Assembly: GCF_032191835.1 (NCBI RefSeq)
Contig: NC_083233.1
Location: 24,490,001 to 24,554,000 of the forward strand
Source: Heteronotia binoei
Taxonomy: Eukaryota
Direction of reading: 5' to 3'
DNA: 64,000 bases
Part shown: piece after piece, positions 374 through 62,638 of the stretch
How positions within the stretch are numbered: the first letter of the stretch is position 1
Layout: each line of letters starts with the position of its first letter
Position numbers and translations under genes: made by a program
The notes under the pieces: generated by a model
What the model saw: the letters and a program-made list of their open reading frames with translations, nothing else
The model's database searches: none
What the model was told of the DNA's origin: nothing

Positions 374-11427
<11,054 letters not shown>

Positions 11428-14260: not shown

Positions 14261-16950
14261 CAGTTTAAAGACCTTTGGTGGGAAAGATTGTTGGAAGACT
14301 TTATCTGACTTACTTTAGGCAGCTTTAGGTATTCATTGAAGGTCATAGAGGGTTTGGATTCATGTTTTCAGGTAGCAAAATAGTCACACAGTAGAGGTGA
14401 CCAGCGGTCGTTTTGTAGAAAACTAGGTGGCGGAGCTCATTAGCATAAGCCCCCCCCCCGCCAAAAGCAGCCTGATGCAAGAAAGGAGAGCTCAAGCAGG
14501 CCAAGCTCCCCTGGACTCTCCTGCCCCCGCCCCAAAGGCCAGCAAGCCACCCATTGCCCAAAATCACAGAAGAAGTAGAGAAAGGGTGGCGTGGGCTTCT
14601 CCAGGGGTTAATGAGGGCTACTGGGGGTGTGGCAAAGCCCTTGGTAGCTGGCTGTCCGCTCTCCTAATCGAGGGATTATTATGCAGTTGCACCTACTATT
14701 CAGTGGACAAGGTAGGTATGTGGGGAAGAGGAGGGGGAACCCTCAGAAAGGTTCAGAAGCTGTGCTCCTGTGAGCTCCTGCTAAATTTGAGGCCTGGAGG
14801 TGACTTTAAAAGGAGGGGATTCAATAAATTCATGAAGGGATAGAGGTGGGTAGCCGTGTTGGTCTGGTGAAGTGTGCTTGCATGTGAAAGCGCACTCCTT
14901 GCATCAAACTTTGTTAGTCTTAAATGTGATACTGGACTCTTTTAACTTTTTTCATAAAGGGACATTAGCCATGATGGATTAAATGGGCCCTCCATGTTCA
15001 GGGGCAGTATATCTCTGAAAGGCAGTTACTGGGGGGGGGGGCGGTTATCAACAGAGGTCAATTTTGATCCCTGTTTGTGGGCCTTCCAGGACAGCCACTA
15101 TAGGAATCAAAATTCCAGATTACATGGACTCTTGGTCTAATCCAGCAAGAAGCTTGTTATGTTCATGCTGTGGCAATGGGCAAGTGACGTTGTTGTACCT
15201 GTTAAGTTTTAGCTGTTGTGGTTGCTTGGTTAGATTTATACTTGGTTATATTTATACTACCTACTGAAATAAGCTAGCAGTTTTCCATTGCACAAAACTG
15301 TTAAAACTATTGAATTAAAAATTTATCATAAATAGAAGGCTCTGTGCACAGTACATACCAGTTCTGGTGGATCAGACTAAAGGTGCATATAGCCTATCTT
15401 GTTTCCTATTATGGCCAGCCAGATGCCTCGATTAATGCATGAACTGCGTAAGGTCCGCTTAACTTGGCAACTCCATTTAGCAGTTATGGTTAATAGTAAT
15501 AGATCTGCCCTCCTTGAATTGATCTAACTCCACATTAAGGTCAACAAAGCCACGGGTGGTCATCACATATGGCAGCTGCAAACTCTATAAACTGATGGAA
15601 ACTCAGACAAGTGGATTCAACTGTTGCTTCGGCCACTATCAGTTAAAGGTCTTTCAGTGGCATTGGTGGAAAACATGACATGAAGATGCCTTCTTCAATG
15701 AACTAGCCTTGTGTGGTTTGTTATTTTTTTTTTAAGAAACTCACATCCTCCAACGTGCATTTTGTGGGGTGCTAGGCTTACTTCCTGAAAGGTTTGAGGT
15801 GGAGCACATAGAGAGCAGATACAATCAGGGCTTTTTTTGTAGCAGGAACTCCTTTGCATATTAGGGTGCATCCGCCTGATGTAGCCAATCCCCCAAGAGC
15901 TTATAGGGCTCTTAGTACAAGGCCTACTGTAAGCTTCAGGAGGATTGGCTACATCGGGGGTGTGTGGCCTCATATACAAAGGAGCTCCTACAAAAAAAAG
16001 CCCTGGATACAATCCTGCTGTGAAGTGAAATTCTTGGGGTGTGGGGGGGTCTATCTGGCCCACACTCGGAGTGACTGGGATGATTGGGCAGGAGTCTTTT
16101 ATTGTCTTTCTGTCTGAGATCTTTGTAGCTAGAAATGCCTTAGGGTGAACCTTGGACCTTCTGCATGCCAAGGAATCTGGGAACAGACTTGAGATAAGTT
16201 GTGAACCTGCAGTGGTAGAATATGTTGCTTTGTGTTTTATATAAAGGTAAAGGCAGTCCCCTGTGTAAGCACCAGTCATTGCCAACTCTGGGGTAATGTC
16301 GCATCACAACGTTTTCACGGCAGACTTTTTATGGGGTGGTCTGCCATTGCCTTCCCCAGTCATCTACACTTTACCCCCAGCAAGCTGGGTACCCATTTTA
16401 CTGTCCTCGGAAGGCTGGAAGGCTGAGTCAACCTTGAGCTGGCAACCTGAACCCAGCTTCCGCCAGGATCAAACTCAGGTCATGCGCAGAGCTTGGACTG
16501 CAGTACTGCAGCTTTCCGCTCTGCACCACAGGGCTGCTGTGTTTTATATAGCTCATGTTATTTCTCCTGATACAGTCATGAGCGCTGGTGGCACTAGGGA
16601 AGGGGATAGGGATGGAGAAAGAACCCGAGGGGTAGCATGTACATCTGGTTGTTTTGAACAGCAGGAAAGCTGGGTATGTCCCTGCTGTGTAGAAGGGCTA
16701 AATGCTTTGAGCAGGTTCTGCCATTCAGAATGCACTGCTGTTGCTTTTTGTGCACAGGCTGACTCTTTCCCTTCCATGTCTTGAACAGGAGAAATGCATG
16801 GACAAACCTGGGCCCAAGCTGGACAGCCGAGCAGAGACCTGCTTTGTGAACTGTGTGGAACGCTTCATAGACACAAGCCAGTTTATCCTCAACCGATTGG
16901 AGCAGACACAGAAATCTAAGCCGGCCTTCTCGGAGAACCTATCTGACTGA
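13975..16950 (+). CDS. TIMM8A: Mitochondrial import inner membrane translocase subunit Tim8 A (DDP1), 97 aa
   Basis: Exon 1 13975-14106 ([44 protein letters not shown], donor GTAGGG); exon 2 16789-16950 ([53 protein letters not shown]). Twin CX3C motifs CWEKC and CFVNC intact. Confidence 0.98.
14402..14796 (+). mobile_element. hAT-type MITE in the TIMM8A intron
   Basis: Exact 8-bp TSD GAGGTGAC (14394-14401, 14797-14804); related to 61195-61360. Confidence 0.8.
15826..16005. mobile_element. Palindromic hAT-type MITE
   Basis: TIRs cagggcttttttt / aaaaaaagccctg, internally self-complementary; exact TSD GATACAAT. Confidence 0.88.
16243..16535 (-). mobile_element. Sauria-type SINE
   Basis: Reverse complement ends in the BovB-like tail ...ggggactgcctttaccttt; homologous to 29011-29305 and 37301-37585. 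Confidence 0.85.
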
Positions 16951-18862
16951 GCCAGAGGCATTGGCGCCTCTGTTTCCTTAATTAGAGGAGAACATCCGAC
17001 CAAGATGGGAGAGGAGGAGCGAGAAGGGAGAGCAGAGGGAAAGGACCAACAGTGAAAAGAAGCTGTGCAGGAAGTTGGCCTCATTGTGACAAGTTCCAGG
17101 GCTTCCTACCAACATAGTAATTGGTCTGGTTTTCAGTACCCACCTTGTGAACAAAAATAGGCCAACAAGGCCATGCAACATCACACATTTGCTGCTCACC
17201 GTGGGCTTGTGCTGCCCTGGTTTTTTTAATAACAGAAGCTTCACACCACAGATGTGCGGCTTTGGCTGTCTTGCTTTCCCCAAAGGTTTGGCCAGGGAAG
17301 CACAATCTGTTCATACTTGAGAAAACCTCTTTCTTGAAATTAGGAAGCTCGGGTGGCTTTCAGACACTTGATGTGAATCTTGGGAAAGGCAGGTTGGAAA
17401 TGTGCCTTTTACAAACGGAACTGCGCTTTAGCACTACTCTTTTAAGCCAGGCAGCAAACTCACCTGTGACTCAGTGGACCGTTGTGTGCACCACTTTGTG
17501 TTTAACTGGGCCCTGCAGTTAAAACAAAGGGAAGGTGGGCATAGCTTGCACCCGTATGCCAGTAGAACCCTGTGATCCTTCATGAGATTCTTAACATTCT
17601 CTTTAGAATGGCTAGGAATACCACCTTCCCCCCAATATGGCTGTTGGGGCAGGGGGCACTGTCACTTGTTTGGTCATGTAACGTCACTTGAGAAATACAA
17701 GAGTTAATACTAACTTTTCCCATTCGCTGCTTTCTCCTGATCAGTGGAATAAACATCAATTGGATCCATTGAAAACTGCCTGCAGAGTTGGTGGCATTCC
17801 TTGCTTCAACTAGATTTGCTGGAATTCAGGTGTAGGAGGAACGCTTGGTGGTAAATCATGATGATATGAAAAATGGTATCCTGTATGAAAAATCTGGCAA
17901 GTGGTATTGGGCAACCCAGCTCAGTTTCCCTGAGCAGTAGTTCACAAACCTGTTAGCGCACAAAATGTGTATCAGCCTTAGTCCTGTAAATGTTTTCCAG
18001 TTATTTTACAACCAGTGTTTTTACTAGCTTGCCCCTCCCCCCCCCCCCCCCCGAGACAACTTTGGCAAAGATCAGCTGGTTGGGATCTTCACCATAAGCA
18101 ACTTAGTGAATTGTTACTTTGAGGCTGGAAAGCTTTAAAATGACTATTCCTCAGAAGAAGAATTAGCTGGTACATAGGAATAAGTACAGCTTGTAAATTG
18201 TTCAATGCGAATGATCCCACCAGTTATCATCACTGAACTAGTTATAATAGTTGTGTTAACCTTTTGCGGCATAAACAAGTCTTTATGGCAACAAATACTG
18301 ACAAATGCATTGCGGAGTTAAGCTTTTGCAGTTTGAAGCCCACTGTCAGGTACCTAAACAAGTAGGCATGTATATTTTTGAGTACTATGGAGGGAGGGGG
18401 GAAATGAGCCATTTTATTCATTTGGGTTAGGTTCAACATATTAGTTGATCTTCACAATGCCACAAGATTCTCCGGTTTTATTTCCATATAGTATCTTGGT
18501 TTTTCCACTGCATCTAGCAGCTTCTACTCTGCTGTAAGAAAGCAGGGCTAAAAATAATTGCTTTCTAAGGGTTGATTTACTGGTATGTGTTCTTTATTTT
18601 CTAGAGTTTTTCAAATTTTATTTGAAGCATGCCTCAGAATTAATCAGGAGGCTTCTATTATTTTTGGATAATCTGATTTCTTGCCACCTGTGCAAAAAAA
18701 AAACTACACAAGAATGAAAAAAGCATACTGATGCTATACTAATCTTGTTGCTTAGTTCTCTGAAAATCTGTAGCTGGGAAGCAAAGGATTACACGCGTGG
18801 GTTTCTTTTTCTCATCTAAATTGTTGCTTAAACTGGTGAAATCCAGCAGTAGGTGAAATAGA

Positions 18863-42300: not shown

Positions 42301-44023
42301 AATAAACAAACTGCCCTCTTTTGTGGTCTCTTGGAGTAGGGGTCAGCCCAAGCAGGAGACCCCGCTGTGCATTTTGTTCTCATTATCATCATCGTAGTGT
42401 TTTCAGATAGAGAATAGCAGCAACAATGGTCATGTTTTCTTATTTTTGCCAGACCCGTCTGCAAGCTGTGCTGGATGAGTTCAAACAGCAAGAAGAGCGT
42501 GAGAAGCAAGAGGTAAGCCATTCACATCTGCCGTGCTGTCGAGCAGAACAGGGGATGGACCAGTTTGGCAAACCAGCAGATAGCAACTTGCAAACTTGTC
42601 AGTGGTGTATCAAAATGTCCCAGCATATTTTGAGTATGAAAAGTTTGTCAGGGAAAGAATTTGCTGTGCTTGGTAATCTAGAGGACTAAGCATGGTCTTA
42701 ACAGCTGAGTTACCAGGAAATGCTATATACTGTAGCCTATAATCTCTTAAAGAGAACCAGCGTGGTTAAGAGCAGCAGACTCTAATCGGGTTTGATTCAC
42801 TCCTCCACATGCAGCCAGCTGGGTGATCTTGGGTCAGTCACAGTTCTCTCGGAGCTCTCTTAGCCTCACCTACCACACAGGGTGTCTGTTGTGGGGAGAT
42901 GAAGGGAAGGCGACTGTAAGCTACTCCAAGACTCCTTCAGGTAGTGAAAGGCAGGGTATAAAACCAACTCTTCTTCTTAAATGGAGATATTCTTGGATTC
43001 TCTTGTGGAGAACAGCATTTATTTCCTTTTGCATCTCTGATGTCTCCTTTTTTAGTCTCGCGGCATTCAATTATGGGAACTAGACATGGGCTCACACGAT
43101 CCCACCCTGCCTTCTCCTGCATTCCACTGCAGCTGTACTTTCTGATGTGCAGCAAAACATAGTCCGTCAGTGTCCAAACCACAAAGGAAAGGGGTTTTTT
43201 TCTTGCTTCCTGAGCTGGATTGCAGCTTGTTTTGGACCAGAAAGTCTTCTATAGCGAATGGCACATGGGAGTACGCAAACCCAAGGCCTTTCTGAAGTTC
43301 TTATAATGACTAACCCCAGCTTGTCATGATGTCTGAATGTGGCTTGTGTGTGAACCTTAAACTTCATTGGTTTCACTGCTCTACAGTGGAGCCTTTTGCC
43401 ATCCCTTTCATTCCATCTTGGCTTTCCCAGGCTTGGACAGTTTATGCCCTAAATGTAGGGTTTCCCCAGGGCACCCCTCTCTGTGTCCAACAGAGTGCTT
43501 CAGATTGGTTCTGACCCTTTACAGTACAGCCACAAGCAGTATTACCCCTTTCTGAGTCTGTTGACTTGGGGTGTCACTCTGCTTCAGACTGTCGGATTAA
43601 ATACCCCCTACGGCCCCGAAGGCGTACTGGTAATTGGGTTGTTTGACCTGTTAGATGACAGCTAGGACTGAAAGTCTACTCTTTTGTCTTTTGAGGGGCA
43701 AGACTGTGCTGGCAGTGGGAGGCTGAATATGGGGAGAAAGGAAGGGAAAGGAATGGGGGAATTTGGGGGAATTGCCACAGCTTCTCAGTGAATGAGGAGG
43801 AGGAGCAGTGAGAGGAGGTGGGGGGGATGCATGTCTCCCTTGGACTGAACAGTGATGGTGCTAAGGAGGGGCAGGTCTGTTTTGCGTGCAGCCAGAACAG
43901 CTTCTGGATCTTGAATATTAAGCACTGACAATACCATCCTTACCTCTCCCCCCCCCCATTTATTCTTTTTCTCTGCAGTTGGCCTCTCTTCAGGAGCAGC
44001 TGGAAGCCCTTATGGAGAAGTAA
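33367..44023 (+). CDS. TAF7: Transcription initiation factor TFIID subunit 7 (intron-containing TAF7/TAF7L-locus gene), 353 aa
   Basis: Exons 33367-33432, 33554-33632, 34518-34651, 36399-36525, 36828-36886, 38985-39057, 40654-40770, 41383-41571, 41699-41811, 42453-42512, 43979-44023(TAA); 1062 nt in frame. [35 protein letters not shown]...[44 protein letters not shown]...[11 protein letters not shown]. Position after TIMM8A matches human TAF7L. Confidence 0.96.
34760..36016 (+). mobile_element. 5'-truncated, frameshifted CR1 LINE (RT C-terminal half + 3' UTR)
   Basis: ORFs 34846-35436 ([32 protein letters not shown]) and 35562-35831; CR1 tail at 36001-36016. Confidence 0.95.
37301..37585 (-). 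mobile_element. Sauria-type SINE
   Basis: Homologous to 16243-16535. Confidence 0.85.
37798..38060 (+). mobile_element. tRNA-derived SINE
   Basis: gagccagtttggtgtagtggttaagtgtgcggactcttatctgggagaaccgggtttgattcccc... Confidence 0.9.
39058..40653 (+). other. U12-type (minor spliceosome) GT-AG intron of TAF7
   Basis: 5' splice site GTATCCTTT (39058-39066) is the U12 consensus. Branch-like TTTTCCTTTGAC at 40622-40633, about 20 nt before the AG at 40652-40653. Confidence 0.8.
39969..40247 (+). mobile_element. tRNA-derived SINE (inside the U12 intron)
   Basis: Full-length copy with a ttcttc tail. Confidence 0.9.
42752..42980 (+). mobile_element. tRNA-derived SINE (related subfamily)
   Basis: gggtttgattc B-box and shared cctcacagggtgtctgttgtgggg core. 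Confidence 0.75.
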
Positions 44024-48836: not shown

Positions 48837-51800
48837 ATGGAGGAAACATACCTGCTTAATGTGGAAGGAGTCAAGAAAAAGATTTTACATGGAGGCTACG
48901 GGGAGCTGCCGGATTTCAAAGAGGGGAGCAAGGTAAACTTGCTAGCACTGAAGCAGTACACAGAATGTAGCATAGATCTACTGTGATGCATCTGTGTTAA
49001 GTAACAGTGGTCCCAGGTAATTCTTTCCTAGCATCCCCACTGAACACCAACCCAGGGTGCTGACTTTGTTTCCTTTTATCCTGTCTGCAGTCCCAGTGTT
49101 GTGTGACAGTTTTTTGGCTTTCCAAACTAAGCAAGCTCACTTTGGAAAAGCTAGCTGCCATCTTATTTCACCCGGGTTTTTATTTTTATTTCTAGCCTTT
49201 CTGTCAACATGGGCCTTGAAGGCAGTTTATAGTATTTTAAAAAGATTCAGGAAAATTCAATAACACCAACACAATACCTCAAATCCAGAAATGAACAGCA
49301 GTGTATATGCTGGTTTGCTTTATTTGCTACCAAAAGCTCTTGATAATGCCAGATGGTAACGTTGGCACCAGATGGATGTGTTTGGGGTAGTAGTTCCAAA
49401 GTTAGGGTGCCACCACAGAGAAGGTTCTGTCTCTGGTAGTCACCTACCTAACATCTGATGATACAGAACGAATAGACAGCTGGCTTGTTAGATTACATGG
49501 TCTAGATATCAGAGCAGTAGAGATTTATTCTTTGAGCTCCTGTCCCATCTGTCAGTGGCCCAGTGGTCCTGGACCTTGCCATTGGAAGAAAGAATAATTT
49601 CAAATAAACTTCCAATTATGAACTGCGAGCCAACTCTTTCCTGGGTACTAGACATGAAGGTTGGATGTTAAGCACAGTGAAAAGCCAGGACTTCCAGTTA
49701 TCAAGATCTGGACTACCTGGAGTCTAACACTTGTTAATTTTTGTCCATTTTGGATGCAGATCACTTTCCACTTCCAAACACTGAAGGACGACTTTGAGCG
49801 AACAGTCATAGACGACAGCCGCGAGTCTGGCCTGCCCATGGAGATCATTGTAGGAAAGATGTTCAAAATCGAGGTGTGGGAGATCCTGTTGACGTCCATG
49901 AGGATCGGCGAGGTGGCGGAGTTCTGGTGCGACCCAATTGTGAGTATGCTGCTATGCTAGAGCTGCCCTGCATCCTTTAGGTACAGGATAAGATTTCGAG
50001 AAGCTCAGCACTCTAACGGTGGTTGCAGCAAGGGGACTTAGGAAAAAAGGCTTGAACTTGAAGGGTCTGGGTCCAGATGTCTGCTTAGCATGCTGACCTG
50101 GATAGCCTAGGCAAGCCTGATCTTGGGAGCTAAACAGGGCCAGCCCAGCCTAGTTTTTGGATGGGAGATATCCAAGGAATACCAGGGATGTGACACAATG
50201 GCAGGCAATGGCAAGCCTCCTCTGATCATCCGTTTCCTTCAAGGCCCATTAGGGGTCACCAGAAATCAGCTTGACTTGATGGCAAAACTCCCCCACAAGT
50301 GTCTGCTTGGCCAGTTTGGTGTAGTGGTTAAGTGCATGTACTCTGATCTGGGAGAACCGAGTTCGATTCCCCACTCTACCACTTGCAGCTGCTGGAATGG
50401 CCTTGGGTCAGCAATCGCTCTCACTGAAAGGGAAGCTTCTGTGAGCGCTCTCTCAGCCCCACCTACCTCACAGGGTGTCTTTTGTGGGGTGGGGGAGATA
50501 AAGGAGATTGTAAGCTGCTCTGAGACGCCGAGATTCAGAGTGTAGGGCGGGGTATATATCCAATATCATCATCATCTTCTTCATAAAGTCTTGCTATAGG
50601 GCATTGAACAAATGGCCCACTCATAGCCTCAGGTTTTTTTGTTTGATATTGTGGCTGTATGGAAGAGAAAGGAAGGCTGTTGTTTACCTGGAGCCTGAGG
50701 AATGGAATTGGGCAGGCCGCACAAATTTGGCAGCTAGGTAACTCCAATCCTAAGAGTTCTTTCTTATGAGTAAGCCCCACAGAATTTACTTCTGAGCAGC
50801 CCTGCTCAGGATTCCTTCCTAAAAATGATACGCCATTTGTATGAATTTATTTATTACTTTAAATTTCTATCCCGCCCTCTCCGCAAGCAGACTCAGGGCG
50901 GCTAACAATCAGTTCTATAAAACAATTTAAAACATTTTGTGGTACTATACAATTTCAGTATGGCGGGATCTTTCGTTTTCTGTTTCTGTTCGCGATCCTA
51001 TAACTGAGCAATGCAGATAAACTACATTTGTTTATGCTTGGATAATACTCCCTCCTCTGCCAGTCATGTGATAGGGGGATAAAAAGTCCTTTATGGCACT
51101 GATGCTTTTGATTGTTAGAAATCCTCCTTCTCCCCAGCTTCTGAAATTTCAGCAGTTGTTTCCCACACCATTTTTTTCTACCTTCAGTCAGTCACATTTT
51201 ATTTGTATCCCGCCCTCCCCACCAAAGCGGCTCAGGGCGGCTAACGACAAGAACTTAATGCATACATTGCATAGCCTTAAGGGCTAGATACTTGGTTTAT
51301 TAAAACAAAATAAATCAAAGGTAAGGCTGAGATTCTTTGTATGCCAGTTTCTGCACCTAGGACTGTGCTATGGACTTATCTGAAATATTTCTGTCCTGCA
51401 CCCTCGGTTTATTGCTCCTGAGGCAGCTTTCAATCTCAGTTATTAAAGCAGATGCAATGGGACTATAGACTACAATAGCCCCACTTACAGAAAGAAAATA
51501 TGCTAATTTCCAAAGCAGGCTTTGATGACTTCTATGCTGCCATGTGGTTGCCACATTAAGTGGTTGTATAACAGTTACTTAATGCAAAATACCACTTGCT
51601 CAGGCCCCTACCCACCTACCTACCTGCTGCTTCTCTGCCTTATTCTCTTGGTATGTGTATGGCTATATTTGGATATCTGGATATTTGGGTTAATCTGGAT
51701 AAAGTGTTCTCTGTTTCCAAAGGCTTCTACTGGACATCAGAGGTAGGCAGGGCAGGATTAACATAAAATCCAGTTGAGGAAAGAAAGGCAGACAGTTAAG

Positions 51801-54800
51801 CTGCAGCCAACATAGCAGAGATTTACTAGACTGTGGGCAAAATGGACAGGATTTATGCATTTATTTATGTATTTAGATAGTTCGTAATAAACCAATATAC
51901 AGGATATGGAATATTAAGATCTATACCATGACGGATCCCTAAAACAAAGCATGACATGCGTGCACACACACAAATCTTTTATGTAGTCTTTTGCAAAAGC
52001 ATGTTCAACTTGTTTTTTGGTTAAATTTCTAGATAGATAGATAGAATTCTTGGCTACATCTTCAAAAATGCAAGATCTGAAATGAAATTGAATAGATAAT
52101 GTTTGCTATTGGTGTGGTGACCATGCCACAGTGCCTGCAACACGGTGTAGAGTTATTTTACATACTTTCAATGTACTTTCAGTGTACTCCGCAACTGGAT
52201 TTTACTATGCAAAATGACAAAATCCACTTGCAAATAGTTGCTGGAGTGGCTTGAAACTGCATTATTTAGCATTCGTGAAAGCATATCTTAATAAAACAGT
52301 GGGGTGAATTCTTGGCTATATCTTCTCCAAAAATGCAACATCTGAAATGAAATTGAATGCCTGGGTCACCACCATCTAAAACAGCAGAGGGCATCGGTTG
52401 TTGACAGGATTGGGACCATGCTGATAGGAAATTTTGTAAGAACTATTACATAGGGATGCCATGAATTTTGTAGCAAATGTGTTTGACAGTCGGATTTCCT
52501 GTGTTCCACTGTGGTGATCCTATGTTAGCCAGTTCTTGCCACTGAATGACTTGAAATTTTCCCAAACCGGTTTGTATGTTTTTCTTCTCAAAGCTTCACA
52601 TGTGCGAAAGATGCTGTCCATCAAAGAGATGAGCAGCCATTAACATAGCTAAGGACTGACTGATTTATCTGTGTCTATTTCAGCAATGGTTGGCTGAACG
52701 GAGCAGCAGTGTAGTAAGGGCACGCAAGCGTGCCTGAAAAGCTGATCAAGAACTTTCATGCTGTTAGAAAGGAAGAGAGTGAAGTCACCTGGCAAACAGC
52801 CACAAACAGGCTGACAAATGAACAGTCCACTGAGAAACAAACTGTAAGATTTTGCAGTTACTCAGAAATACACAGAAAATCTCTTTGGGGTCTAGCAGCA
52901 ATTTTTCTCCAGGGCAGTTTGCCAGGGATCCTGGAGAGGGGTTTTTTTTGCCATCTTTTTGCCATTTGTGTGTGTGTGTGTGTGTGGAGAGGTATTTGTG
53001 AATTTCCTACATTGTGCAGGGGGTTGGACTAGATGACCCTTGAGATCCCCTCCAACTGTAGGATTCTCCTTTAGTTAACAGAGTAACTTGACTCAGCCCT
53101 GATCTGGATAGCCCAGGCTAGCCCAGTCTCATCAGACCTCAGAATCTAAGCAGGATTGGCCCTAGTTAATATTTATATAGGAAGGAAGTAGAAGTAAGTA
53201 GTTTACTTAGCCATGAATAAAAAGCAAGTACTTCTTCACCCAAAGAATGATTAACACTTGGAATTCACTGCCACAGGAGGTGGCGGCAGCTGCAAGTATA
53301 GACAGCTTCAAGAGGGGAATGGGTAAACATATGGAGCACAGGTCCATCAGTAGCTATTGGCCACAGCGTATTGTTGGAACTCTCTGTCTGGGACAGTGAT
53401 GTTCTGTATTCTTGGTGCTTGCGGAGGGGGGGCACAGTGTGAGGGCTTCTAGTGTCCTGGTCCCACTAATGGACCTCCTGATAGCAGCTGGGGGTTTTTG
53501 GCCACTGTGTGACACAGATTGTTGGACTGGATGTGCCATTGGCTGCCCCTGTACCGAACTCGGAAACTGCAGCTAGTGCAGAATGCAGCAGCCAGACTGT
53601 TAATGGGACTACCTCGGTGGGAACATGTACGGCCTAGGCTGCGAGAACTGCACTGGCTGCCAATTGTGTACCGAGTCCATTACAAGGTGCTGGTTATTAC
53701 CTTTAAAGCCCTATATGGCCGAGGACCTGTTTACCTTAGGGACTGTCTCTCTCCATATGTTCCCCAGAGAGCACTGAGATCTAGTTCACAAAATCTTCTG
53801 AAAATCCCTGGGCCAAAGGAGGCTAAGTTAAAAACAACTAGGGAGCAGGCCTTCTCAATAATGGCACCCCAATGGTGGAACCAGCTGCCAGAAGAGGTGT
53901 GGGCCCTGTGGGACTTTAACCAGTTCTGTAGGGCTTGTAAAACTGCCCTCTTTCAACTAGCCTTTTAAGTTGAATTTAGCAGTAACATCAAGCCATCTTT
54001 ATATATACTGAGTCCATAGCACCGTTACGTTTTACTGGATTTTAGACTATTTATGTAATTTAATTAATATATGAACAGTTTTATATTGTTACTGTTTTGA
54101 TTTTATTGTTGTTGTATCATGGTATGTGCCATGTCCTGTAAGCTGCCCTGAGCCTGCCTTGGCGGGGAGGGCGGGGTATAAATAAAAATTTGTTATTATT
54201 ATTATTATTATTATCCAACATGGCTTCTCTTATGTTCTTATATTCTAGTGGACTGGAACTACTCCAGGTTCTAGTTATCCTGGAAACTAATATAAACATG
54301 AAACAGACTGCTGAACATCACACAGGCTGTCTTTTTCGACAAACAAGCTATCAGCCAACATGACAGATGTTCAAGCGCCCTCCTATTAAATAGCACCCAA
54401 TAGACTTTATTAAATGTAATCATGCAATGTGAAGGGGTTGATTTAATCAGTCTGAATCAGGGCATCTTTTAGTCTGGTTTTGACTGTCTTTTGTCTTTCA
54501 AAATAATAGACTTCAGTCTTAAAAAGCCAGGAGACTCTCCTTGATAGATCAGGGATCGGTAAGCAGTCATGACTGAGTCTTAACAGTTGTTTCCTTTTCC
54601 CTCCAGCACACCGGCATGTACGCCTTGATTTCCAAAAGCATGAGGAAAATTGTTGAAGGCAAGGACCCTCTGGAGGGGCAGAAGCATCGCTGTGGGATGG
54701 GCAACATGTTTGATTATCACAGCACAGGCTACACAGATCTGGATGAGTTGCAGAGGACGCCCCAGCCCCTCATCTTCATCATGGAGCTTTTCAAAGTGAG

Positions 54801-57800
54801 CAATAGATTCAGAGAGAAGACAAAGGCTGTTGCAGTCTACCATCTTTCCATGGGATTTTACACAATCTATTCCCAGTGTGATAGATCACGGGTGGCCAAA
54901 CTTGCTTAATGTAAGAGCCACATAGAATAAATGTCAGATGAGCCACAAGACATGAATGTCAGATGTTTGAGAGCCACAGGGGAAGGAAGGAAGGAAAATA
55001 GATGGGGAGGGAGAGGTGGAAAGAAAGCAACTTTAACTTTAAATGCATTCTCCAAGTTGCAGGCTGGCTTGGCTTGGATATAGATCTAAAGAGAAAAATG
55101 GCTTCTCCAAGATGGCCAAGAGGCCAGTGGAAGCTTTGAGAGCCACACAATATGTGTGAAAGAGCCACATGTAGCTTCCGAGACACAGTTTAGCCACCCC
55201 TGTGATAGATCAAGTTGGGTAGCTGTGTTAGTCTGTCTGTAGCAGCAGAAAACAGCAGGAGTCCAGGAGCACTTTAAAGCCTAACAAAATCTGTGGCAGG
55301 CTATGAGCTTTTGTGAGTCACTGCTCACTTCTTCGTATACAGCTAGAATTCATGGTCTGCACTTTGGGTAGGAAGGGACATAATCTGAATACCAGGAATG
55401 GCTCAAGTTTTGGGTTGCTCTGGAGAGTATGTCCTTCAGTGTCCCGCCCCTGCCCATGCTAGTGTCTTGGTGCTCATGAACAGATAAACCCATCTTGGAG
55501 GAGACACAATTCTTTCATACTTCTACAGATCTTGTTAATAACAACAAAGCTAAAAGAAAGGCATATTTTCTACACACAGGATGATCTGGGGCGTGGGGTG
55601 ACCGCAGAGATGATGAATTACCATTTCCTGTCCTATTCAGGTAGAAGACCCTTCTGCTTACAAACGGGACACGTGGGCCATGAACACAGAAGAGAAGCTG
55701 GTGGCTGTACCGAAGTTACACACCGAGGGAAACCGGTTGGTCCTGTCCCGGAAGTTCAAGGAGGCAGCAGAGAAGTACCAGGAAGCTGTCATCTGCTTGC
55801 GCAACATTCAGGCTAAGGTGAGAATTAATTGGCGATTCTGAGTTTTTGAATTGATGCTCTGGGATCTTCTTAATGGCGGCCACATTGAAGAATAGCAGAG
55901 CCATTGTTTCAGGCCACTTCTCTTGAATCCAGCTCTCCATTGAATCCAGGTGTCCCATATCCATATCCATATGATACAGTTCCACCTCCCAGGGCGATAT
56001 GGATTTTCCCTGTGAATGGACAAGCTACCATCTAGGAACCTATGTGAAGCTGTTTTGAGTTCTTCCCATGAAAGGTTAGTTATAAATAAATTATGAGTGG
56101 GCCAAAGGTAGATAGAGATCCACCAATAGATCATTGGCCAGTTTTTGGTGAATCACTTGGTTGCTAGGCGCCAGAACCCCATGCACTAGGCCTGGTCATA
56201 ATGCTATATCATCTTAATCTAGTATTCCATCTCTGAGCCTATTGCTGTACTGATATATAGAATGCGCCCAATGGAAACCGTCACCTGTGATATAGATGCT
56301 ATTTGTTTTATTGTATTTTATGGTTTTAGCTTGTAGTTTTAAATATTTTAACTTTTGTTGTTCTCTGCCATGAGCCCACTTGCAGGAAAGTGCGGAATAC
56401 AAATTAAAACACATAAATAAGAGTGCATGCATGGAATTGCAGCCTAGATTAGTTATGCCTTAGCTGTCAAGTTGGCTTACAATTTTATGAATCTTTTTAT
56501 GAATCTTTAGCTGGGAGTAAGCCCTACTAAGCACAGTGTAATATGCTTCCATCTGACTAAATACAAAACCCATTAGTGGGTGATGGGGAGTCTACTCAAA
56601 ACAAAAATACACCATGATATAAGACTGACATCAGTCAACCTAATCAGTCAGGTTTTCTTATCTACCATCCCTAATCTTTCCCAGGGCTTTTTTTTTTTGG
56701 GGGGGGGGGGGTTAGAAAAAGCCCAGCAGGGACTCATGTGCATATCAGGCCACATCCCCTGATGCCGAGCCAGCCGGAACTGTGTTCCTGTGCGTTCCTG
56801 CTCAGAAAAAGCCCTGATATTTCCAACTCCAAGTCTCCAACCCAGGCCATTCTATCACTCTAAAATCTTCTTCAGCGCAGGGAATCTATAGTTTTTCACA
56901 TTAACTGGACAAGCTGCCTCTTCAGCCCAGCTATAACAAACTGTCTTACTGTCTTGGGCTAAGGAACAGATTTCATTAGCTGAGCTTTTCAAGAGGAAGA
57001 CGGAAGTATAAATGTAGTGAATATAATGGAAGTAGGATGATAAAGAGTAGGTTTCTTCTTTGCTGCTGGTCGTCCCATAGCCATTTTGCTTTTTTTGGTG
57101 ACCCAGCCTCCCGTTAACCATTAATCCAGGCCATCTTTCCTTGGTCTCTTGACAGGAGAAGCCATGGGAAGAAGAATGGCTACACCTGGAGGAACTCATC
57201 ACCCCTCTTGTGCTGAACTATTGCCAATGCCAACTGGAGCTGGGAGAATATTATGAGGTTTTGGAGCACACTACTGATCTTCTCCAGAAGGACAACGGTA
57301 AGCTGCCTCTCCTGACAGCTGCTTACAGGTCACCCCAAAACTAGACCCAGACTTCTCCCCCCCCCCTTCAACGTTCATAGTCTTTTGAATGGCTAGCAAG
57401 TCATCCCCTCCGAAAATTGTTGAGAATTGGTACTTCTGATTATTTATGTATTATTTATTACGTTAGATGTATATCCGGCCCATTCTACGAAGACTCAAGG
57501 CAACTAACAACATTACAGTGATTGGATCTATTTTTATGGTTTTATCTAATGTGATTCCGGAAGGGAGTCAGGAATTTGAGGTGAAAGAACTGATGTGCTG
57601 AATAGCAGCAGTTCTCTCCCGAACGGGGACACAGAGTCATCAGCATTGCTACTGCAAATGCCAGGAGATTCTGAAGGCAGTGCCTGGGGAGGATGGCGCT
57701 GGGGGGGTGATGTCACTTCAGAGTTTTGCCCAAAAACTAGAACGTCAGTGGTGTGATGATATCACTTTGGATGTCAGCTCCTGGGAAGGTCTGAAGATCC

Positions 57801-60489
57801 CCCTACTGGGAAGCAGGCAGGACCTAGCAACCCTAAATCTGTTGAAGCTCCTGCATTCCTCAACATTTCTCCTTAGGCAGCTACCCATCAGGAATAATTT
57901 TTTGTAAAAACCCTGGAAAACCATCAGAAGCAAAAGCTTCAAACCAAAACCAATAATTTGGGCAATTTAAAAACCAGCAGCAGTCTATTGAAAAGTGCAA
58001 TGCAAAACAGAGCAGAGAGTATTCAAATGATGATAACCAAAAGGCTGCCAAATAAAATAAGACCTTCTCCTGGCAACTGAAGGTCAACAAGTGTGGTGCC
58101 AAGAGGAATGGCTGGGGAGTTTTGCAGTCAAGGGGCCACCAAAGAAAGGACCCCGGTTCCAAAACTTGCCTGCTTTACTTTGGAACATGAGACTAAATGG
58201 ACCTGATATTAATGAAGCTGATCTTAACCGACAGGCAGGCTCAGAAGGGAATAAGTCATCATTCAAATGACGTGGTCCCACATTATTCAGTTGCAAATAG
58301 CACAAACTTTACAAAGGCACTGTAAGTCTCTAGTATTCTCTAATGCGTATTACTGAATCTGACAGTGCCACAACTAGAATTTCTAACTGCTCAGGGTGAT
58401 GGATATAACAAATCTACGAGTTCAGTCTTAATAAATAGTTTTTAACGTGTGAGCAATAGACCAATGCCAAATTAGTAGCATTGTGCCTGTTAGACCAAAG
58501 AAATGATTTTGTATCCTTAGACCCCGAGATTTGGCTTAAAATTCAGGCTACAAATCCTAACTGAGCTATGAATGCCATCAGCTTTGTTGAGGCCAGCTAA
58601 AAGTTTGAACTCTCAGATCCCCTTATCTGAAAAAGTAAAAAGGTCCTCTGACAAGAGAGCGTGTGAGAAAATGATTTGTCTTTATTCTCATTTTAGAAAA
58701 CGTCAAGGCGTATTTCAAACGGGCAAAGGCCCATGCTGCTGTCTGGAATGAAAAGGAGGCACGAACTGACTTCATGAGGGTGACCCAGCTTGACCCCTCA
58801 TTGGCTGCCGCCGTGAGGAAAGAGATGAAGCTCTTGGGGGAGAGGATGAGGAAGAAATATGTGGAAGAGCGCAAGAAATACCAGGGCATCTTCGACCACC
58901 ATCTAGCAAAAGATGGGACTGAAGAGCGAGCTGGGGAGGGGACAAAAGGGCTTGCTAAGGGACAAGAGGAGGTGCAGCACAATAGGCTCAAGGCACAGAT
59001 GGAAGAAAATGGGCCAGAAGCCCTGGAAGAAAGTAGAGCAGAAGCCCTGTGGTCTGAGAGAGAGGCAAAATGGCCAGGAGTGGGTGAGAAGGATGGAGAA
59101 ATAGAGCAAGGAAATTGGGACAAGGAAGACCAAGGAGGACTCCTAAGAAAGGAGAGGGCAATGGACAAGAAGCAGGAAGAGATGATGGTGGCTGAAACTG
59201 GAGATGAAATGCAAGAAAGCCAAGCTCAACAAAAGGACCGCAGCTTTTTCTGGGAAGAGAGGGCAAGTTGGGAAACCTCTATGTCCAACCAACAGTTGGG
59301 GTTTGGGGAATGGAAACCAAAGGAAGAGCAAGAAAAGGCAGAAGAGACAATGACTTTGGGGACACCAGAACAAAATGGAGCACTAGGCTTTGCAACAGTA
59401 AAAGGAGAGCGAAGAAAACTCATTCGGAGATATTCTGGGGAGGACGTGGAGGAAGCTGCGGGAGATTTCTGGTCCATCACAGAGGACATGTTTAACCAAG
59501 AGTGCTGCGAGGCAGAGAGGAGCTTCCTGGGAGCAGAGAGGGAAGAAGATGAAGCAAGGAATGGAGAAACCCAAGCTAGAGATTCTTCTCGACCTCAGGA
59601 AGAGACAGGCTGGGCAGAGGACTTCACGGAATGGGCAAGAGAGGAGAGTTCTGAGGAACTCTTCGAAGAGGATTTCTTCCAGGCCCCTCAAGGAGAGCCA
59701 GAGAGAGGAGAAAGGATGACGACAGAACTGAGTCCAAGGGAAGAGTCCTCCCCAGAATGGTGGGATTGTGCGGGGCTAAGGGAGGAGACTTCCACCGCTG
59801 AGAAGGAAGAACGCAAAGCAGAAATGGAATGGCAAGGAAAAGAAATACAAACTGCTGTTTGTTCCAGGCCAGTGCAGGAGTCACATGGATACGCAAACAG
59901 CTGCTGCAAGGAGTACCACGAAGCAGAGACAGACCTCAAAGAGATAGTTACAGGAGCCGAAAACTGTAGGGAAGGAATACAAGACGAGAGCTCCAACAGA
60001 GAGATAATCTTTGAAGGAAAGTTTTCATGGGAACAGAGAGATGAGCGCATAGAAGAAATTACTAGCTGTGTGCAGGAAAAGACCAAAGTTGAGTCGAGCT
60101 CTAGGGCTCAGGAAGAGAGCTGGGAGTATGAAGTAGGCCTAGAATGTCTGGAGGATGAGCTGTGCTTTAGGATTGAGAAATTCAAGGTAGGAATGGGTGA
60201 AGGGAATTCTGACAGAGATCAAGGCAAGGAGGATTTCCTCTGGGAATGGCCAGAGAACACAGGAGAGATGACTCACCTGAGCATGAAGGAAGAACCTCTC
60301 TCTCCCTGGAGTGGTGGAGATACACCAAAAGTCGAAGGTGGAGGCCCACACGTTACAAGAGGTAAAGACACAAGCCAAGCTTGCTGCACAGTGCAGATGG
60401 CTGAGCCTGGAGTGAAAAGCGTGCCCAACGTTTGGGGTACAAAACAGCCCAGCCCAGTAGAGGAGGAAGCCCAGGGAAACAGGAAGTGA
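48837..60489 (+). CDS. AIPL1-like (AIP-family FKBP-like + TPR co-chaperone) with long acidic C-terminal extension, 858 aa
   Basis: Exons 48837-48932, 49760-49939, 54607-54795, 55641-55817, 57156-57297, 58697-60489(TGA): 96/180/189/177/142/1793 nt, 2577 nt in frame. The first five sizes equal the human AIPL1 boundaries (c.96/276/465/642/784). Peptides [63 protein letters not shown] keep W72, C89, C239 and W278 equivalents in register. Confidence 0.93.
50310..50583 (+). mobile_element. tRNA-derived SINE
   Basis: Same family as 37798. Confidence 0.85.
53215..54240 (+). mobile_element. CR1 3' fragment split by an inserted L2 3' fragment (about 53546-54212)
   Basis: CR1 UTR runs to ...ccattggc at 53546. 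Then L2 peptide [20 protein letters not shown]...LHWLP...KTALFQLAF and a (TTA)n tail. CR1 resumes as tccaacatggcttctcttatgttctta at 54214-54240. Confidence 0.88.
54887..55202 (-). mobile_element. hAT-type MITE (CAGGGGTGGCCAAAC family)
   Basis: Exact TSD TGATAGAT (54879-54886, 55203-55210). Confidence 0.88.
56682..56816 (-). mobile_element. hAT-type MITE (CAGGGCTTTTT family)
   Basis: TIRs present; flanks ATCTTTCC / ATATTTCC. Confidence 0.8.
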
Positions 60490-62173
60490 AGTATGAAACG
60501 TATGGGGATGTATGTTGGTTGCTATGGCCTGCTGTGACTTTCAGGGCTGGACTGAAGTCACGCTAGCTAGCAATCTGTGCTGAAGCCAGCTCGCCTCCAG
60601 GCATCCAGGTTCTAAGATCTGCGCTTGTTAATCACAAAGGGAGATGGGACAGCAATTTCATCTAGGAAAGAATGGCCACAGTCGCCAATCAGATTACACT
60701 GCAGCTCAGCCAGGTAGCCCAAACATGCTCTTGTCCTCCTTTCTTGGTCTGTCTGTATCCCTTCCTCCCCCACCTCCTGTTGGGTTTCCAGCAGCAAAAC
60801 CGCCCTCTATGGTGTCATCTGGCATCTTTAGCAGCTGTGCAACCTGAGTTGTGAAAAGGTCAGTACTTTGTTCAGTGTTTTAGATGGCCTGAAAGAGGAA
60901 CTGCTGCTCATGATGCATACACACATCCCACTGCTGCTTTTGGGCAAACTGGTCTTGTATGACACAGAGGTGGCAAAAAGATCATGGTTTGGAATGATGT
61001 CTTCTCTAGATGCTCTGTGTTCTTGCTGTATAATATGTTGGCTGGGTAGCAAGCAGAGTTTGTGCTTCAAGTTTGCAAAAGCAAGCTGCTTTGCCCCACA
61101 GGTTGTACTGCCAGTTTAGTGTTTAAATTAAAATAATTACCTGGAAGCATCTCGGGCATTTGAAGACATGCACATTTTTATTCCTTTACACAGGGATCAT
61201 TTTGTAGAAAAATACGTGGTGGAGCTCATCCAGGGATTGTTATGCAGCTGCACATACTATTCAATGGACAAGGAGGTGGAACACTCAGAAGGAGAAAGTG
61301 GAACTCTCAGAAAGGTTCAGGAGCTGTGCTCTTGTGAGCTTCCACTGAATCCAAGATCTGCCTTTACACATGGTAAAATGCACATCCCTTCAGTTCTAAA
61401 CAATGCAATCTATCCAATTACATGCTGTTAGTGTTGATTCCCCCTTTTCCCCTGCAGATCCCTATTACCACTGGAACTAAATTTCAGGAGGCTCAGGGGG
61501 ATGCAGTAAGACTTTAATGTATAAAGCAAACAAGCACCCCCTACTTTGGGGGCAACTCCTCTTGACTCAGCTGAAATGTAACTAGGGTTGCCATCTTCAG
61601 CTTAGGGAAGTCTTAGGAATGTGAGAGAGTTCAGGAGAAATGTGATGTCACATCCAGGTCAAAGTTGAATTCTTCTCCTGCCTGTGGGGTCACCTACGCC
61701 CCCCCCCACCAAAACCCAGAGTTTAAATTTCCCACCTTGTACCACATCTCCCAGCCCTTTTCTGTGACCTTACATCATTTGTAGTCTACTGTATTCATGG
61801 TTCTGTAGATCATACTCACCCTTTGATATGTGTGTATCTAGCTGCTGTCCACTTATGTCCACTTAGCCTCAAGAACTTCCAAAATGCTCTTCAGATTTTT
61901 CTCAGTGTTAAGGAGAAAAATTCATTCCGAAGGTCCACAAGAGGATGCCAAACAGAAGTCTCATGTCTCAGTCCCCAGCTAGCTTCTGGTATATTAACAA
62001 ATGACAGTAAGTTTCTCCTAGTCTCTCTGGTACACCATAGGGGCACAACACTGTTTTACCTGGCTATTTCCCCCCAGGCAGTGTGGGCAGAAGCCAGGAG
62101 TGGGAAGAGGTCTCCCTACTTCCAGGTGTGACTTCTCACAGAAGTTTATTGTGACCACGAACCTCTTATATGC

Positions 62174-62638
62174 CAGGGCCAGCTCTTCTACTAGGCAAAC
62201 TAGGCATTTGCCTAGGATGCCGGCCCTGGAGGGGTGCCAAATTAGGCACCCCCCTTTGTTTCTAAAAAATCCTTCCCCTCCCTCCCCGAATCGCTAGTCT
62301 TCCTCTTTCCCGCCGCTTTCCCCTGCGCCCCGAATCGCTAGTTTTTCCCCTTGCCGTCGCTTTTCCCCACCTCCTCCTCCTCCCTCCCTGAATCGCTAAT
62401 CTTCCCCTTTGCTGCTGCTTTTCCCTGCCTCCTTTCCCTCCCTCCCCGAATCGCTAGTCTTCCCCTTTTCCCCACCTCCTTCCCCTTCTTCCCCAAATCG
62501 CTAGTCTTCCCCTTTGCTGCCGCTTCTTCCTGCCTCCTTCCCCTATAGATAGGGGTATGAAGGGGCAGCAGGGAGAGTGGAGGGCACGGTGGGGGGGTGG
62601 GATGCACAGCAAGGCTGCCTGGGGTGCTGCTGGCCCTG
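62174..62638 (+). mobile_element. Probable hAT-type MITE containing a pyrimidine-rich minisatellite
   Basis: TIRs cagggccagc / gctggccctg; five copies of (c)cgaatcgctagtcttcc between 62286 and about 62515; TSD poorly conserved. Confidence 0.6.

What the first reader, a model, noticed from the sequence alone, without database searches (positions are those of the whole stretch)
58903..60489. AIPL-family co-chaperone with a 528-aa Glu-rich tail encoded in one giant terminal exon
Seen: the FKBP-TPR core ends at ...[13 protein letters not shown] (residue 330). Established: human AIP ends at the equivalent point (...RFRGIFSH), and primate AIPL1 adds only a short proline-rich tail. Here the frame stays open for 528 more codons on a purine-rich strand, while the other + frames close quickly. 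The tail is very Glu-rich and probably disordered, yet holds 18 Trp (many in acidic contexts: SWE three times, DFW, EWWD, LWEW), 12 Cys including three CC pairs, and an RRYS basic-kinase-like site. Inference: it parallels other Glu-rich photoreceptor modules encoded by large purine-rich exons (RPGR-ORF15, CNGB1 GARP, RP1L1). It could be an undescribed scaffold, glutamylation target or trafficking arm on an HSP90/PDE6 chaperone. G-rich composition alone could inflate the Trp count.
Basis: partly seen in the sequence, partly recalled or inferred. Interest (0 to 1): 0.8.

Follow-up and report, generated by a model that had tools for sequence, protein, structure and literature searches.

The report
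Gecko AIPL co-chaperone's long acidic tail
The last exon of this gecko's photoreceptor co-chaperone gene (annotated AIPL1) does encode a 528-residue glutamate-rich, probably unfolded tail kept in frame by selection, but similar predicted tails occur on the same gene across reptiles, birds and other non-placental vertebrates, and their function has never been studied.

Summary
Exon 6 (58697-60489, + strand) of a six-exon AIPL gene runs from the third TPR repeat into 528 more codons, giving an 858-aa protein. The tail has 20% Glu, net charge -65, 18 Trp and 12 Cys.

The open frame is not chance. The probability from base composition is 4e-13, and the other two frames hold 21 and 27 stops. Four gecko genera keep the same single exon and the same TGA stop. 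All 37 pairwise gaps are multiples of three, against about 20-25% in flanking non-coding DNA. Codon-model omega is 0.70 for the whole tail and 0.45 for the last 119 codons; both wrong frames give about 1.

Tail homology is detectable in all squamate AIPL proteins and nowhere else among 1.84 billion representative proteins. Acidic tails that read on from the same exon also occur in a stork, a turtle and an echidna. The gene appears to belong to the AIPL-2 (cone-type, zebrafish aipl1b) clade.

So the tail is real and conserved but not unique to this gecko. The GenBank model for this species is cut short at 433 aa. The resemblance to RPGR-ORF15 and GARP is compositional only. Function is unknown. 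I could get no decisive RNA evidence.

The parts
48837..48932 (+). AIPL exon 1 (start codon ATG at 48837)
   Evidence: tblastn of P0004/P0002. The exact GT-AG model translates to P0004 with 0 mismatches.
49760..49939 (+). AIPL exon 2 (FKBP-type domain)
54607..54795 (+). AIPL exon 3 (FKBP-type domain)
55641..55817 (+). AIPL exon 4 (linker / TPR1)
57156..57297 (+). AIPL exon 5 (TPR2)
58697..60489 (+). Terminal coding exon 6: TPR3 and C-terminal helix (58697-58902), the 528-codon tail, then the TGA stop
   Evidence: Acceptor AG at 58695-58696; open frame; TPR_2 match at the start of the exon
58903..60486 (+). The 528-aa acidic, probably disordered tail (the finding)
   Evidence: Composition. In-frame conservation in four geckos. 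Omega 0.70, p=2e-4 against 1. Squamate-wide homology. AF2 pLDDT 28-42 with no secondary structure in the orthologue's tail.
59749..59769 (+). SPEWWDC motif, identical in three geckos and SPDWWDC in the fourth; not conserved in other squamates
60130..60486 (+). C-terminal 119-aa block, the most constrained part of the tail
   Evidence: Omega 0.45 (ML, p=1.5e-4) and 0.24-0.35 (NG86); alignment
60241..60258 (+). WEWPEN motif. The core W-E-x-P-E is conserved across most squamate tails (TWEGPEK / TWEDPEK).
60373..60387 (+). SQACC: the only Cys-Cys pair invariant in all four geckos
61127..61132 (+). First + strand ATTAAA after the exon 6 acceptor, a candidate polyadenylation signal about 640 nt after the stop. 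There is none inside the tail.
   Evidence: Gecko 3' flank similarity runs to about 61120-61190.

Best explanation
SHOWN. Positions 58903-60486 are the coding continuation of the last exon of the gecko's AIPL gene. The gene is annotated AIPL1 and most likely belongs to the AIPL-2 clade, the orthologue of zebrafish cone aipl1b. The product is an 858-aa FKBP-TPR co-chaperone with a 528-aa polyacidic C-terminal extension (net charge -65). The extension has no detectable domain and no confidently predicted structure. Selection keeps it in frame. Most of its residues are only weakly constrained, but the last ~120 residues are clearly constrained. That block holds a cluster of conserved aromatic and Cys motifs (WEWPE, LSPWS, SQACC, VPNVW). 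The architecture, in which the TPR3 exon reads on into a long acidic tail, is shared with birds, turtles and monotremes. The tail therefore looks ancestral to amniote AIPL-2 and turns over fast in sequence, partly through in-frame repeat expansions.

INFERRED. The FKBP-TPR core should act as in AIPL1, binding the prenyl groups of PDE6 and docking on the HSP90 EEVD tail to mature cone-type PDE6. I propose that the tail is a long flexible acidic tether. It would present the conserved C-terminal motif cluster to a partner or a membrane (the CC pair is a candidate palmitoylation site) and keep the chaperone and its client soluble. The tail is not a catalytic or folded module.
For: - Open frame far beyond chance.
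- One exon, the same stop, and 37 of 37 pairwise gaps in frame in four gecko genera, against about 20-25% in the 3' flank and intron 5.
- GY94+F3X4 omega: tail 0.70 (p=2e-4), last 119 codons 0.45 (p=1.5e-4), core 0.17. Wrong-frame controls give 0.94 and 1.12, not significant. NG86 gives 0.39-0.50 for the tail.
- Jackhmmer from the gecko tail converges on all 24 squamate tails.
- The squamate tail profile finds only squamate AIPL proteins among 1.84e9 representatives.
- Acidic tails are present in every AIPL-2-like group and absent from AIP.
- The same exon architecture occurs in stork, softshell turtle and echidna.
- The core is AIPL-like: PF23322 plus TPR, 456 bits to AIPL1 chain 8EOA_C and 409 bits to AIP.
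- AF2 gives the TPR domain pLDDT 79-95 and the tail 28-42 with no secondary structure.
- There is no + strand AATAAA/ATTAAA inside the tail.
Against: - There is no direct transcript or protein evidence. Only two tiny low-depth contigs from metatranscriptome libraries touch the exon (58697-58883 and 60127-60292), and such libraries can carry DNA.
- With a composition-aware codon model, the N-terminal three quarters of the tail is close to neutral (omega 0.78, p=0.03).
- Low pLDDT is weak evidence of disorder here. The known-folded FKBP domain also scored low with this shallow alignment.
- Conservation of Trp is not significantly above the tail average (11/18 vs 43%, p=0.09).
- The tether and motif-presentation mechanism is inference only.
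- A test of the C-terminal block docking on the core gave no verdict.
Confidence: 0.7

Rival explanations
1. The tail is translated but has no positive function. The frame is kept only because frameshifted versions, the basic or hydrophobic peptides of the other two frames, would be harmful. The C-terminal conservation would then be incidental.
For: Omega is 0.78 over the first ~390 aligned codons. Sequence turnover is fast enough that tails of squamates, turtles, birds and monotremes are not alignable with one another. Lineage-specific repeat expansions are tolerated.
Against: The last 119 codons have omega 0.45 (p=1.5e-4). The W-E-x-P-E motif is kept across most squamates. Acidic composition and great length persist in every non-therian lineage examined. 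A harmless tail could also be lost by a simple early stop, and none of the four gecko genomes examined shows one.
Confidence: 0.15
2. The acidic tail is an intramolecular regulator of the chaperone. It folds back on the basic TPR carboxylate clamp or the FKBP prenyl pocket and competes with HSP90 EEVD or the client. The primate proline-rich domain is reported to modulate AIPL1 chaperone activity in a comparable way.
For: The tail is attached directly to the TPR C-terminal helix and carries net charge -65. [quoted passage not shown] 2013).
Against: The EEE stretch near the C-terminus is not conserved among geckos (VEEEA, VDKEA, VKEEA) and is not at the C-terminus. No structural support was obtained.
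Confidence: 0.1
3. The tail is a polyglutamylation or cation-binding platform analogous to RPGR-ORF15 or the CNGB1 GARP region.
For: A Glu-rich stretch encoded by a large purine-rich exon in a photoreceptor gene.
Against: There is no tandem Glu-Gly repeat array in this species; TRF finds only a 24-nt unit in 2.1 copies. No homology to any non-AIPL protein was found.
Confidence: 0.05
4. The tail is mostly absent from the mature protein because an alternative splice (exitron) or early polyadenylation gives a short AIPL ending near residue 330. The long ORF would then be a minor isoform.
For: Multiple isoforms of different length are annotated for turtle orthologues. The GenBank model for this species stops, as 'partial', at residue 433.
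Against: Frame, stop codon and in-frame indels are conserved in all four geckos, which requires translation. There is no poly(A) signal on the + strand between 58436 and 61126. The end of the 433-aa model has neither a stop nor a GT donor, so it is a truncated annotation and not an isoform.
Confidence: 0.05

Closest known systems
Predicted gecko orthologues: Paroedura picta LOC143822945 (855 aa), Sphaerodactylus townsendi LOC125442604 (931 aa), Gekko kuhli K2H54_042893 (1014 aa)
   Same: Same six-exon gene, with the tail in the same single terminal exon and the same TGA. Tail identity is 56-70%. The C-terminal block and about 11 Trp are identical.
   Different: Gekko has about nine extra copies of a ~21-aa unit and Sphaerodactylus two extra ~29-aa units. 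Six or seven Trp and the RRYS site are specific to Heteronotia (RRYS is HRYS in Sphaerodactylus).
Zebrafish Aipl1b, the cone-specific PDE6c co-chaperone (gold rush mutant; Iribarne et al. 2017, PMC5381001), i.e. the AIPL-2 clade of Bhalla & van Noort
   Same: The FKBP-TPR core is about 62% identical to a close zebrafish relative, Danionella. There is a long C-terminal region not homologous to the primate proline-rich domain. The literature assigns reptile genes to this clade.
   Different: The ray-finned fish proteins carry a second, duplicated TPR domain after the core and then a shorter charged tail. The gecko tail has no TPR and no detectable similarity to the fish C-terminal region.
Human/primate AIPL1 with its C-terminal proline-rich domain (PRD)
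   Same: The same FKBP-TPR co-chaperone fold (456 bits to PDB 8EOA chain C). A disordered extension is appended to the TPR C-terminal helix in the last exon.
   Different: The review describes the PRD as a primate-specific, Pro-rich XXPP-repeat region. The gecko tail is 528 aa with 20% Glu and 3.6% Pro, and is unrelated in sequence. The genes are probably paralogues (AIPL-1 vs AIPL-2).
RPGR exon ORF15 / CNGB1 GARP (Glu-rich photoreceptor modules)
   Same: Glu-rich and acidic, encoded by a large purine-rich exon, and probably disordered.
   Different: No sequence homology. It is not a tandem Glu-Gly repeat array. It is attached to a chaperone, not to a ciliary GEF or a channel subunit. Glutamylation is untested.

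Membership tests
AIP/AIPL FKBP-TPR co-chaperones | N-terminal AIP-type FKBP (PPIase_AIP, PF23322) domain | tested here: met
   PF23322 at E=1.7e-22 in the 94%-identical Paroedura orthologue; it is also precomputed for the window's own protein P0004. Exons 1-3 are in the window.
AIP/AIPL FKBP-TPR co-chaperones | Three TPR repeats plus a C-terminal helix, ending ...GIF-x-x | tested here: met
   TPR_2 hit at the start of exon 6. Residues 2-324 align end to end with the AIPL1 chain 8EOA_C, and 7-329 with AIP. AF2 helices span 171-324 at pLDDT 79-95.
AIPL (as opposed to AIP) | Closer to AIPL1 than to AIP | tested here: met
   456 bits to AIPL1 against 409 bits to AIP in the PDB. In the tree, the AIP clade separates with 100/100 support.
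AIPL-2 clade (zebrafish aipl1b type; lost in therians) | Groups with bird, reptile and platypus genes and fish 'AIP like 2', apart from therian AIPL1 | tested here: inconclusive
   The literature places reptiles in AIPL-2. Here the gecko core scores 573-579 bits to echidna and coelacanth and 529-535 to paddlefish and bichir, but only 456 to the solved AIPL1. No therian AIPL1 appears among the best 120 hits of a salamander member. That fits paralogy, but no tree including bona fide AIPL-1 sequences could be built.
AIPL-2 clade (zebrafish aipl1b type; lost in therians) | Cone or pineal photoreceptor expression and a requirement for cone PDE6 | not testable with these tools
   No retina RNA run for this species was found.
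Primate AIPL1 proline-rich domain | Pro-rich XXPP repeats after the TPR helix | tested here: not met
   The tail has 3.6% Pro and 20.3% Glu. No therian AIPL1 appeared among the hits to the terminal exon; the single 'Ailuropoda' entry (P0030) groups with Python and looks mislabelled.
RPGR-ORF15-type Glu-rich repeat domain | Tandem array of Glu-Gly-rich repeats in a purine-rich exon | tested here: not met
   The exon is purine-rich, but TRF finds no array in the tail and the profile search finds no RPGR-like protein.
RPGR-ORF15-type Glu-rich repeat domain | Polyglutamylation of the Glu-rich region (by TTLL5 in RPGR, from established knowledge) | not testable with these tools
   Needs protein chemistry.

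The most novel reading that the evidence does not exclude
The long acidic tail with its conserved C-terminal aromatic/Cys motif cluster is a functional module ancestral to amniote (perhaps sarcopterygian) AIPL-2. It would tether the HSP90-PDE6 maturation machinery to a specific partner or membrane in cone-type photoreceptors. Therian mammals would have lost this layer of PDE6 chaperone biology together with AIPL-2. The gecko-specific Trp-rich elaboration would reflect re-tuning of this module in a lineage whose 'rods' are transmuted cones.
Probability: 0.2. Interest if true: 0.65.

Novelty: new variant of a known kind. Interest (0 to 1): 0.42.

Why it matters
AIPL1 is a blindness gene (LCA4) and a gene-therapy target. 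Its biology has been worked out almost entirely on the short therian protein, and reviews describe the primate proline-rich domain as the only C-terminal addition. This locus, with its relatives, shows something different. The sister gene used by reptiles, birds, monotremes, salamanders and coelacanth carries a 150-690-residue acidic tail that is kept in frame.

In squamates the tail is recognisably homologous throughout the order and ends in a constrained motif cluster. If that tail has a partner, it would point to an unstudied step in cone PDE6 maturation or localisation.

There is also a practical point. The public protein model for this species is truncated at 433 aa and should be 858 aa. 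Several orthologues are labelled 'uncharacterized protein' or misnamed ('neurofilament medium polypeptide-like', 'myb-like protein X', 'golgin...') because of the tail.

Tried and rejected
- RNA evidence. Only two metatranscriptome runs held small parts of the stretch. One 187-nt contig starts exactly at the exon 6 acceptor (58697-58883). One 166-nt contig lies at 60127-60292. Both have depth about 2, and part of intron 5 is also covered, so this shows neither transcription nor splicing.\n- Logan contigs carrying lizard tails (L004, L005) proved to be genomic, with the intron present, and are not mRNA.\n- complex prediction of the core (1-330) against the C-terminal 156 aa of the Paroedura orthologue gave no verdict (0.24, under the mark of 0.34). 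This counts neither for nor against binding.\n- AF2 of the full-length orthologue with a 23-sequence alignment showed no structure in the tail. The FKBP domain was also poorly modelled, so the disorder call rests mainly on composition. The charge-hydropathy plot did not discriminate: it also called the helical core 'disordered'.\n- Deep homology of the tail. Jackhmmer from turtle, bird, echidna, axolotl, coelacanth and fish tails never crossed between groups, and the 1.84-billion-protein profile search found nothing beyond squamates.\n- Pfam found no domain in the tail, and Rfam found nothing in 56-64 kb.\n- A tree to separate AIPL-1 from AIPL-2 failed for lack of genuine AIPL-1 sequences. The one 'Ailuropoda' entry groups with Python and is probably mislabelled.\n- Enrichment of Trp conservation was not significant (p=0.09).\n- The minus-strand ORFs over the tail (up to 181 aa) are Ser/Pro/Leu-rich antisense products of a purine-rich strand, and I found no support for them as genes.\n- Earlier-findings look-ups returned nothing.
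Full report

Yes. On the + strand the frame that starts at 58675 stays open to TGA at 60487-60489. The other two + frames are full of stops. A polypyrimidine tract and an AG at 58695-58696 put the exon start at 58697.

tblastn with gecko AIPL proteins locates five upstream exons. An exact GT-AG model has exons 48837-48932, 49760-49939, 54607-54795, 55641-55817, 57156-57297 and 58697-60489. It gives a 2577-nt CDS, that is 858 aa plus the stop. [quoted passage not shown] The window therefore comes from the gecko Heteronotia binoei.

GIFDHH ends at residue 330, and 528 codons follow (58903-60486).
- E 107 (20.3%), W 18, C 12.
- CC pairs at tail positions 201, 334 and 494; RRYS at 175.
- The quoted Trp contexts (SWE three times, DFW, EWWD, LWEW).
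- Net charge is -65.

The strand is strongly purine-rich. From base composition, the chance of 528 stop-free codons is 4e-13. In 2000 shuffles the fewest stops seen was 13, and the other two frames of the tail hold 21 and 27. Trp is twice, and Phe four times, the compositional expectation.

**2. Is it coding?**

The last exon was used to search 5.8 billion proteins. It returned only AIP/AIPL proteins. These included long-tailed orthologues in three other gecko genera:

| Species | Length | Identity to the query exon |
|---|---|---|
| Paroedura picta | 855 aa | 70% |
| Gekko kuhli | 1014 aa | 68% |
| Sphaerodactylus townsendi | 931 aa | 56% |

I fetched their genomic loci. In all three the tail lies in one exon continuous with TPR3 and ends at the same TGA.

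A nucleotide alignment made without reference to the protein has 5-7 gaps per species pair in the tail. All 37 are multiples of three. In 1 kb of 3' flank and in intron 5 there are 8-20 gaps per pair, and only about 20-25% are multiples of three.

Selection estimates:

| Region | NG86 dN/dS | GY94+F3X4 omega | LRT vs omega = 1 |
|---|---|---|---|
| Core part of exon 6 | 0.04-0.26 | 0.17 | p=3e-8 |
| Whole tail | 0.39-0.50 | 0.70 | p=2e-4 |
| First ~390 aligned tail codons | 0.43-0.57 | 0.78 | p=0.03 |
| Last 119 codons | 0.24-0.35 | 0.45 | p=1.5e-4 |
| Tail, +1 frame (control) | - | 0.94 | not significant |
| Tail, +2 frame (control) | - | 1.12 | not significant |

The F3X4 model allows for the skewed codon composition, so I trust it more than NG86.

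The reading frame is therefore under clear selection. Most of the tail tolerates replacement, and the C-terminal fifth is constrained. There is no AATAAA or ATTAAA on the + strand between 58436 and 61126. The first is ATTAAA at 61127, about 640 nt after the stop. The GenBank model's end at residue 433 (window 59211) has neither a stop nor a splice donor, so it is a truncated annotation.

**3. What I could not show**

I obtained no decisive RNA evidence. The only RNA libraries holding any of the stretch are two metatranscriptomes with low-depth contigs at 58697-58883 and 60127-60292. The first begins exactly at the acceptor. That is what an assembly graph produces when a sequence has two alternative left contexts, such as spliced and unspliced forms. 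However, depth is about 2 and such libraries can contain DNA. Logan contigs from other lizards are genomic.

**4. How old is the tail, and how widespread?**

A profile and a jackhmmer search from the gecko tail converge on the tails of all 24 squamate AIPL proteins in hand and on nothing else. These cover iguanians, an agamid, a varanid, a cordylid, an amphisbaenian, boids, pythons, vipers and elapids.

A profile of 20 squamate tails, searched against 1.84 billion representative proteins, found eight hits, all squamate AIPL. The tail is therefore homologous across Squamata and is not borrowed from any other gene.

Across squamates only scattered positions are conserved. The clearest is a W-E-x-P-E motif: WEWPEN in geckos, TWEGPEK or TWEDPEK in iguanians and snakes. 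Two unidentified Logan squamate sequences (lgn9, lgn20) also share the gecko C-terminal end.

Trp-richness is a gecko trait: about 3.2% in geckos against about 1% or less elsewhere. Eleven of the 18 Trp are invariant in the four geckos, which is not significantly more than the 43% overall (p=0.09). RRYS is present only here, with HRYS in Sphaerodactylus. Only the last CC pair (SQACC) is invariant.

The tail evolves partly by in-frame tandem expansion. Gekko has about nine extra copies of a ~21-aa unit and Sphaerodactylus two extra copies of a ~29-aa unit. In Heteronotia the tail is not a repeat array.

Outside squamates, tails cannot be aligned between orders, but they exist everywhere in this gene lineage with the same character (median Glu 13-22%):

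| Group | Tail length |
|---|---|
| Turtles | 171-331 aa |
| Birds | 156-385 aa |
| Echidna | 337 aa |
| Salamanders | about 150 aa |
| Coelacanth | 328 aa |
| Fish AIP (comparison) | 1-18 residues after the core |

In a stork, the exon homologous to exon 6 runs from residue 262 to the end of the protein (656). In a softshell turtle it runs from 262 to 615, with a 96-nt tandem array. In echidna it runs from 262 to 428. The architecture of a TPR3 exon reading on into an acidic tail is thus shared across amniotes. The simplest reading is an ancestral tail with rapid sequence turnover.

**5. Which gene is it?**

The core has the AIP-type FKBP domain and TPRs. It aligns end to end with solved AIPL1 (456 bits) and AIP (409 bits). 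In a tree it sits with geckos inside squamates, well apart from AIP.

Bhalla & van Noort place bird, reptile and platypus genes in a separate AIPL-2 clade, lost in therians, to which the review assigns zebrafish cone-specific aipl1b. They do not mention any C-terminal region.

My data agree indirectly. The gecko core scores 573-579 bits against echidna and coelacanth and 529-535 against bichir and paddlefish, but only 456 against the solved AIPL1. No therian AIPL1 appears among the 120 best relatives of a salamander member, while fish proteins named 'AIP like 2' do. I could not build a tree with genuine AIPL-1 sequences, so I rate this membership as likely, not proven.

Iribarne et al. (PMC5381001) drew the zebrafish Aipl1b C-terminal region as 'not homologous to the PRD'. 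That figure legend is the only published notice of such a region I found. Searches for AIPL1 with 'glutamic acid-rich', and a 2025 review, yielded nothing on non-mammalian tails.

**6. Structure and mechanism**

Pfam finds nothing in the tail. AlphaFold2 on the Paroedura orthologue with a 23-sequence alignment models the TPR domain well (pLDDT 79-95). It gives the whole tail pLDDT 28-42 with no secondary structure. The FKBP domain is also poor, so this is weak evidence.

The composition is that of a strong polyampholyte/polyanion disordered region: 20% Glu, 9% Gly, 7% Ser, about 40% charged residues.

My best reading is as follows. The core works as in AIPL1, with prenyl binding by the FKBP domain and HSP90 EEVD docking by the TPR domain. 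That much follows from established knowledge summarised in PMC12733016. The tail would be a long flexible acidic tether whose constrained C-terminal cluster (60130-60486: WEWPEN, LSPWS, SQACC, VPNVW) is the business end, binding a partner or a membrane. All of this is inference.

A fold-back test of that cluster on the core gave no verdict. The rival readings are an inert tail kept in frame only to avoid toxic frameshift products, an intramolecular regulator, a glutamylation platform, and an isoform that is rarely made. They are listed with odds in the rivals section.

**7. Verdict**

It is not a one-off: it is the local version of a tail that the whole squamate order shares. Its counterparts occur on this gene in most non-therian vertebrates, and annotation pipelines already predict them. 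What is new is the recognition and the evidence of constraint, and no function is yet known. The analogy with RPGR-ORF15, GARP and RP1L1 is compositional only. Interest is moderate.

Noticed in passing
window 58697-59211 vs 58697-60489: The public protein model for this species (P0004, 'AIPL1, partial', 433 aa) stops at window 59211 in mid-exon, with no stop codon or splice donor. The full CDS is 858 aa.
   Followed up: yes
P0151 (Danionella) residues 373-517; also P0165, P0019, P0012: Ray-finned fish AIPL2-type proteins carry a second, duplicated TPR domain after the first FKBP-TPR core (40-53% identical to gecko residues ~170-325), followed by a charged tail. The zebrafish gosh nonsense codon (Gln413) would probably fall in this second TPR domain, going by the Danionella relative. 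I found no description of the duplication in the papers I read.
   Followed up: partly
L003 (Gekko kuhli) last exon 14951-17212; L002 (Sphaerodactylus) 11844-13814; L006 (Pelodiscus) 5439-7424: Lineage-specific in-frame tandem expansions occur inside the tail: about nine extra ~21-aa units in Gekko, two extra ~29-aa units in Sphaerodactylus, and a 96-nt (32-aa) array in the softshell turtle that is longer in the genome than in its gene model.
   Followed up: partly
P0030 (UniRef entry labelled Ailuropoda melanoleuca, 394 aa): This 'giant panda' AIP/AIPL protein groups with Python inside the snakes with 98/91 support. It is probably a contaminant or mislabelled sequence, not a mammalian AIPL1.
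   Followed up: no
P0083, P0093, P0121 (salamanders): Salamander 'AIPL1' proteins have ~150-aa acidic tails. Their nearest relatives are sauropsid and 'AIP like 2' fish proteins, not therian AIPL1. This sits oddly with the published statement that amphibians lost AIPL-2.
   Followed up: partly
window 61191-61378: A high-copy interspersed repeat lies just after the probable 3' end of the gene. Hundreds of contigs, at summed depths in the thousands, from two RNA libraries pile up here at 90-95% identity.
   Followed up: no
window 62284-62544: A C/T-rich minisatellite (period about 44-58 nt, ~4 copies; GC 0.57-0.60, strongly negative GC and AT skew) lies downstream of the gene.
   Followed up: partly
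window ~43060-44023 (+): The upstream neighbour is a TAF7-like (TAFII55_N) gene, as in Paroedura and Sphaerodactylus. Its last coding exon ends near 44020. If it is the TAF7L type, this would fit the published synteny of AIPL-2 with the human X chromosome (from memory, untested).
   Followed up: partly
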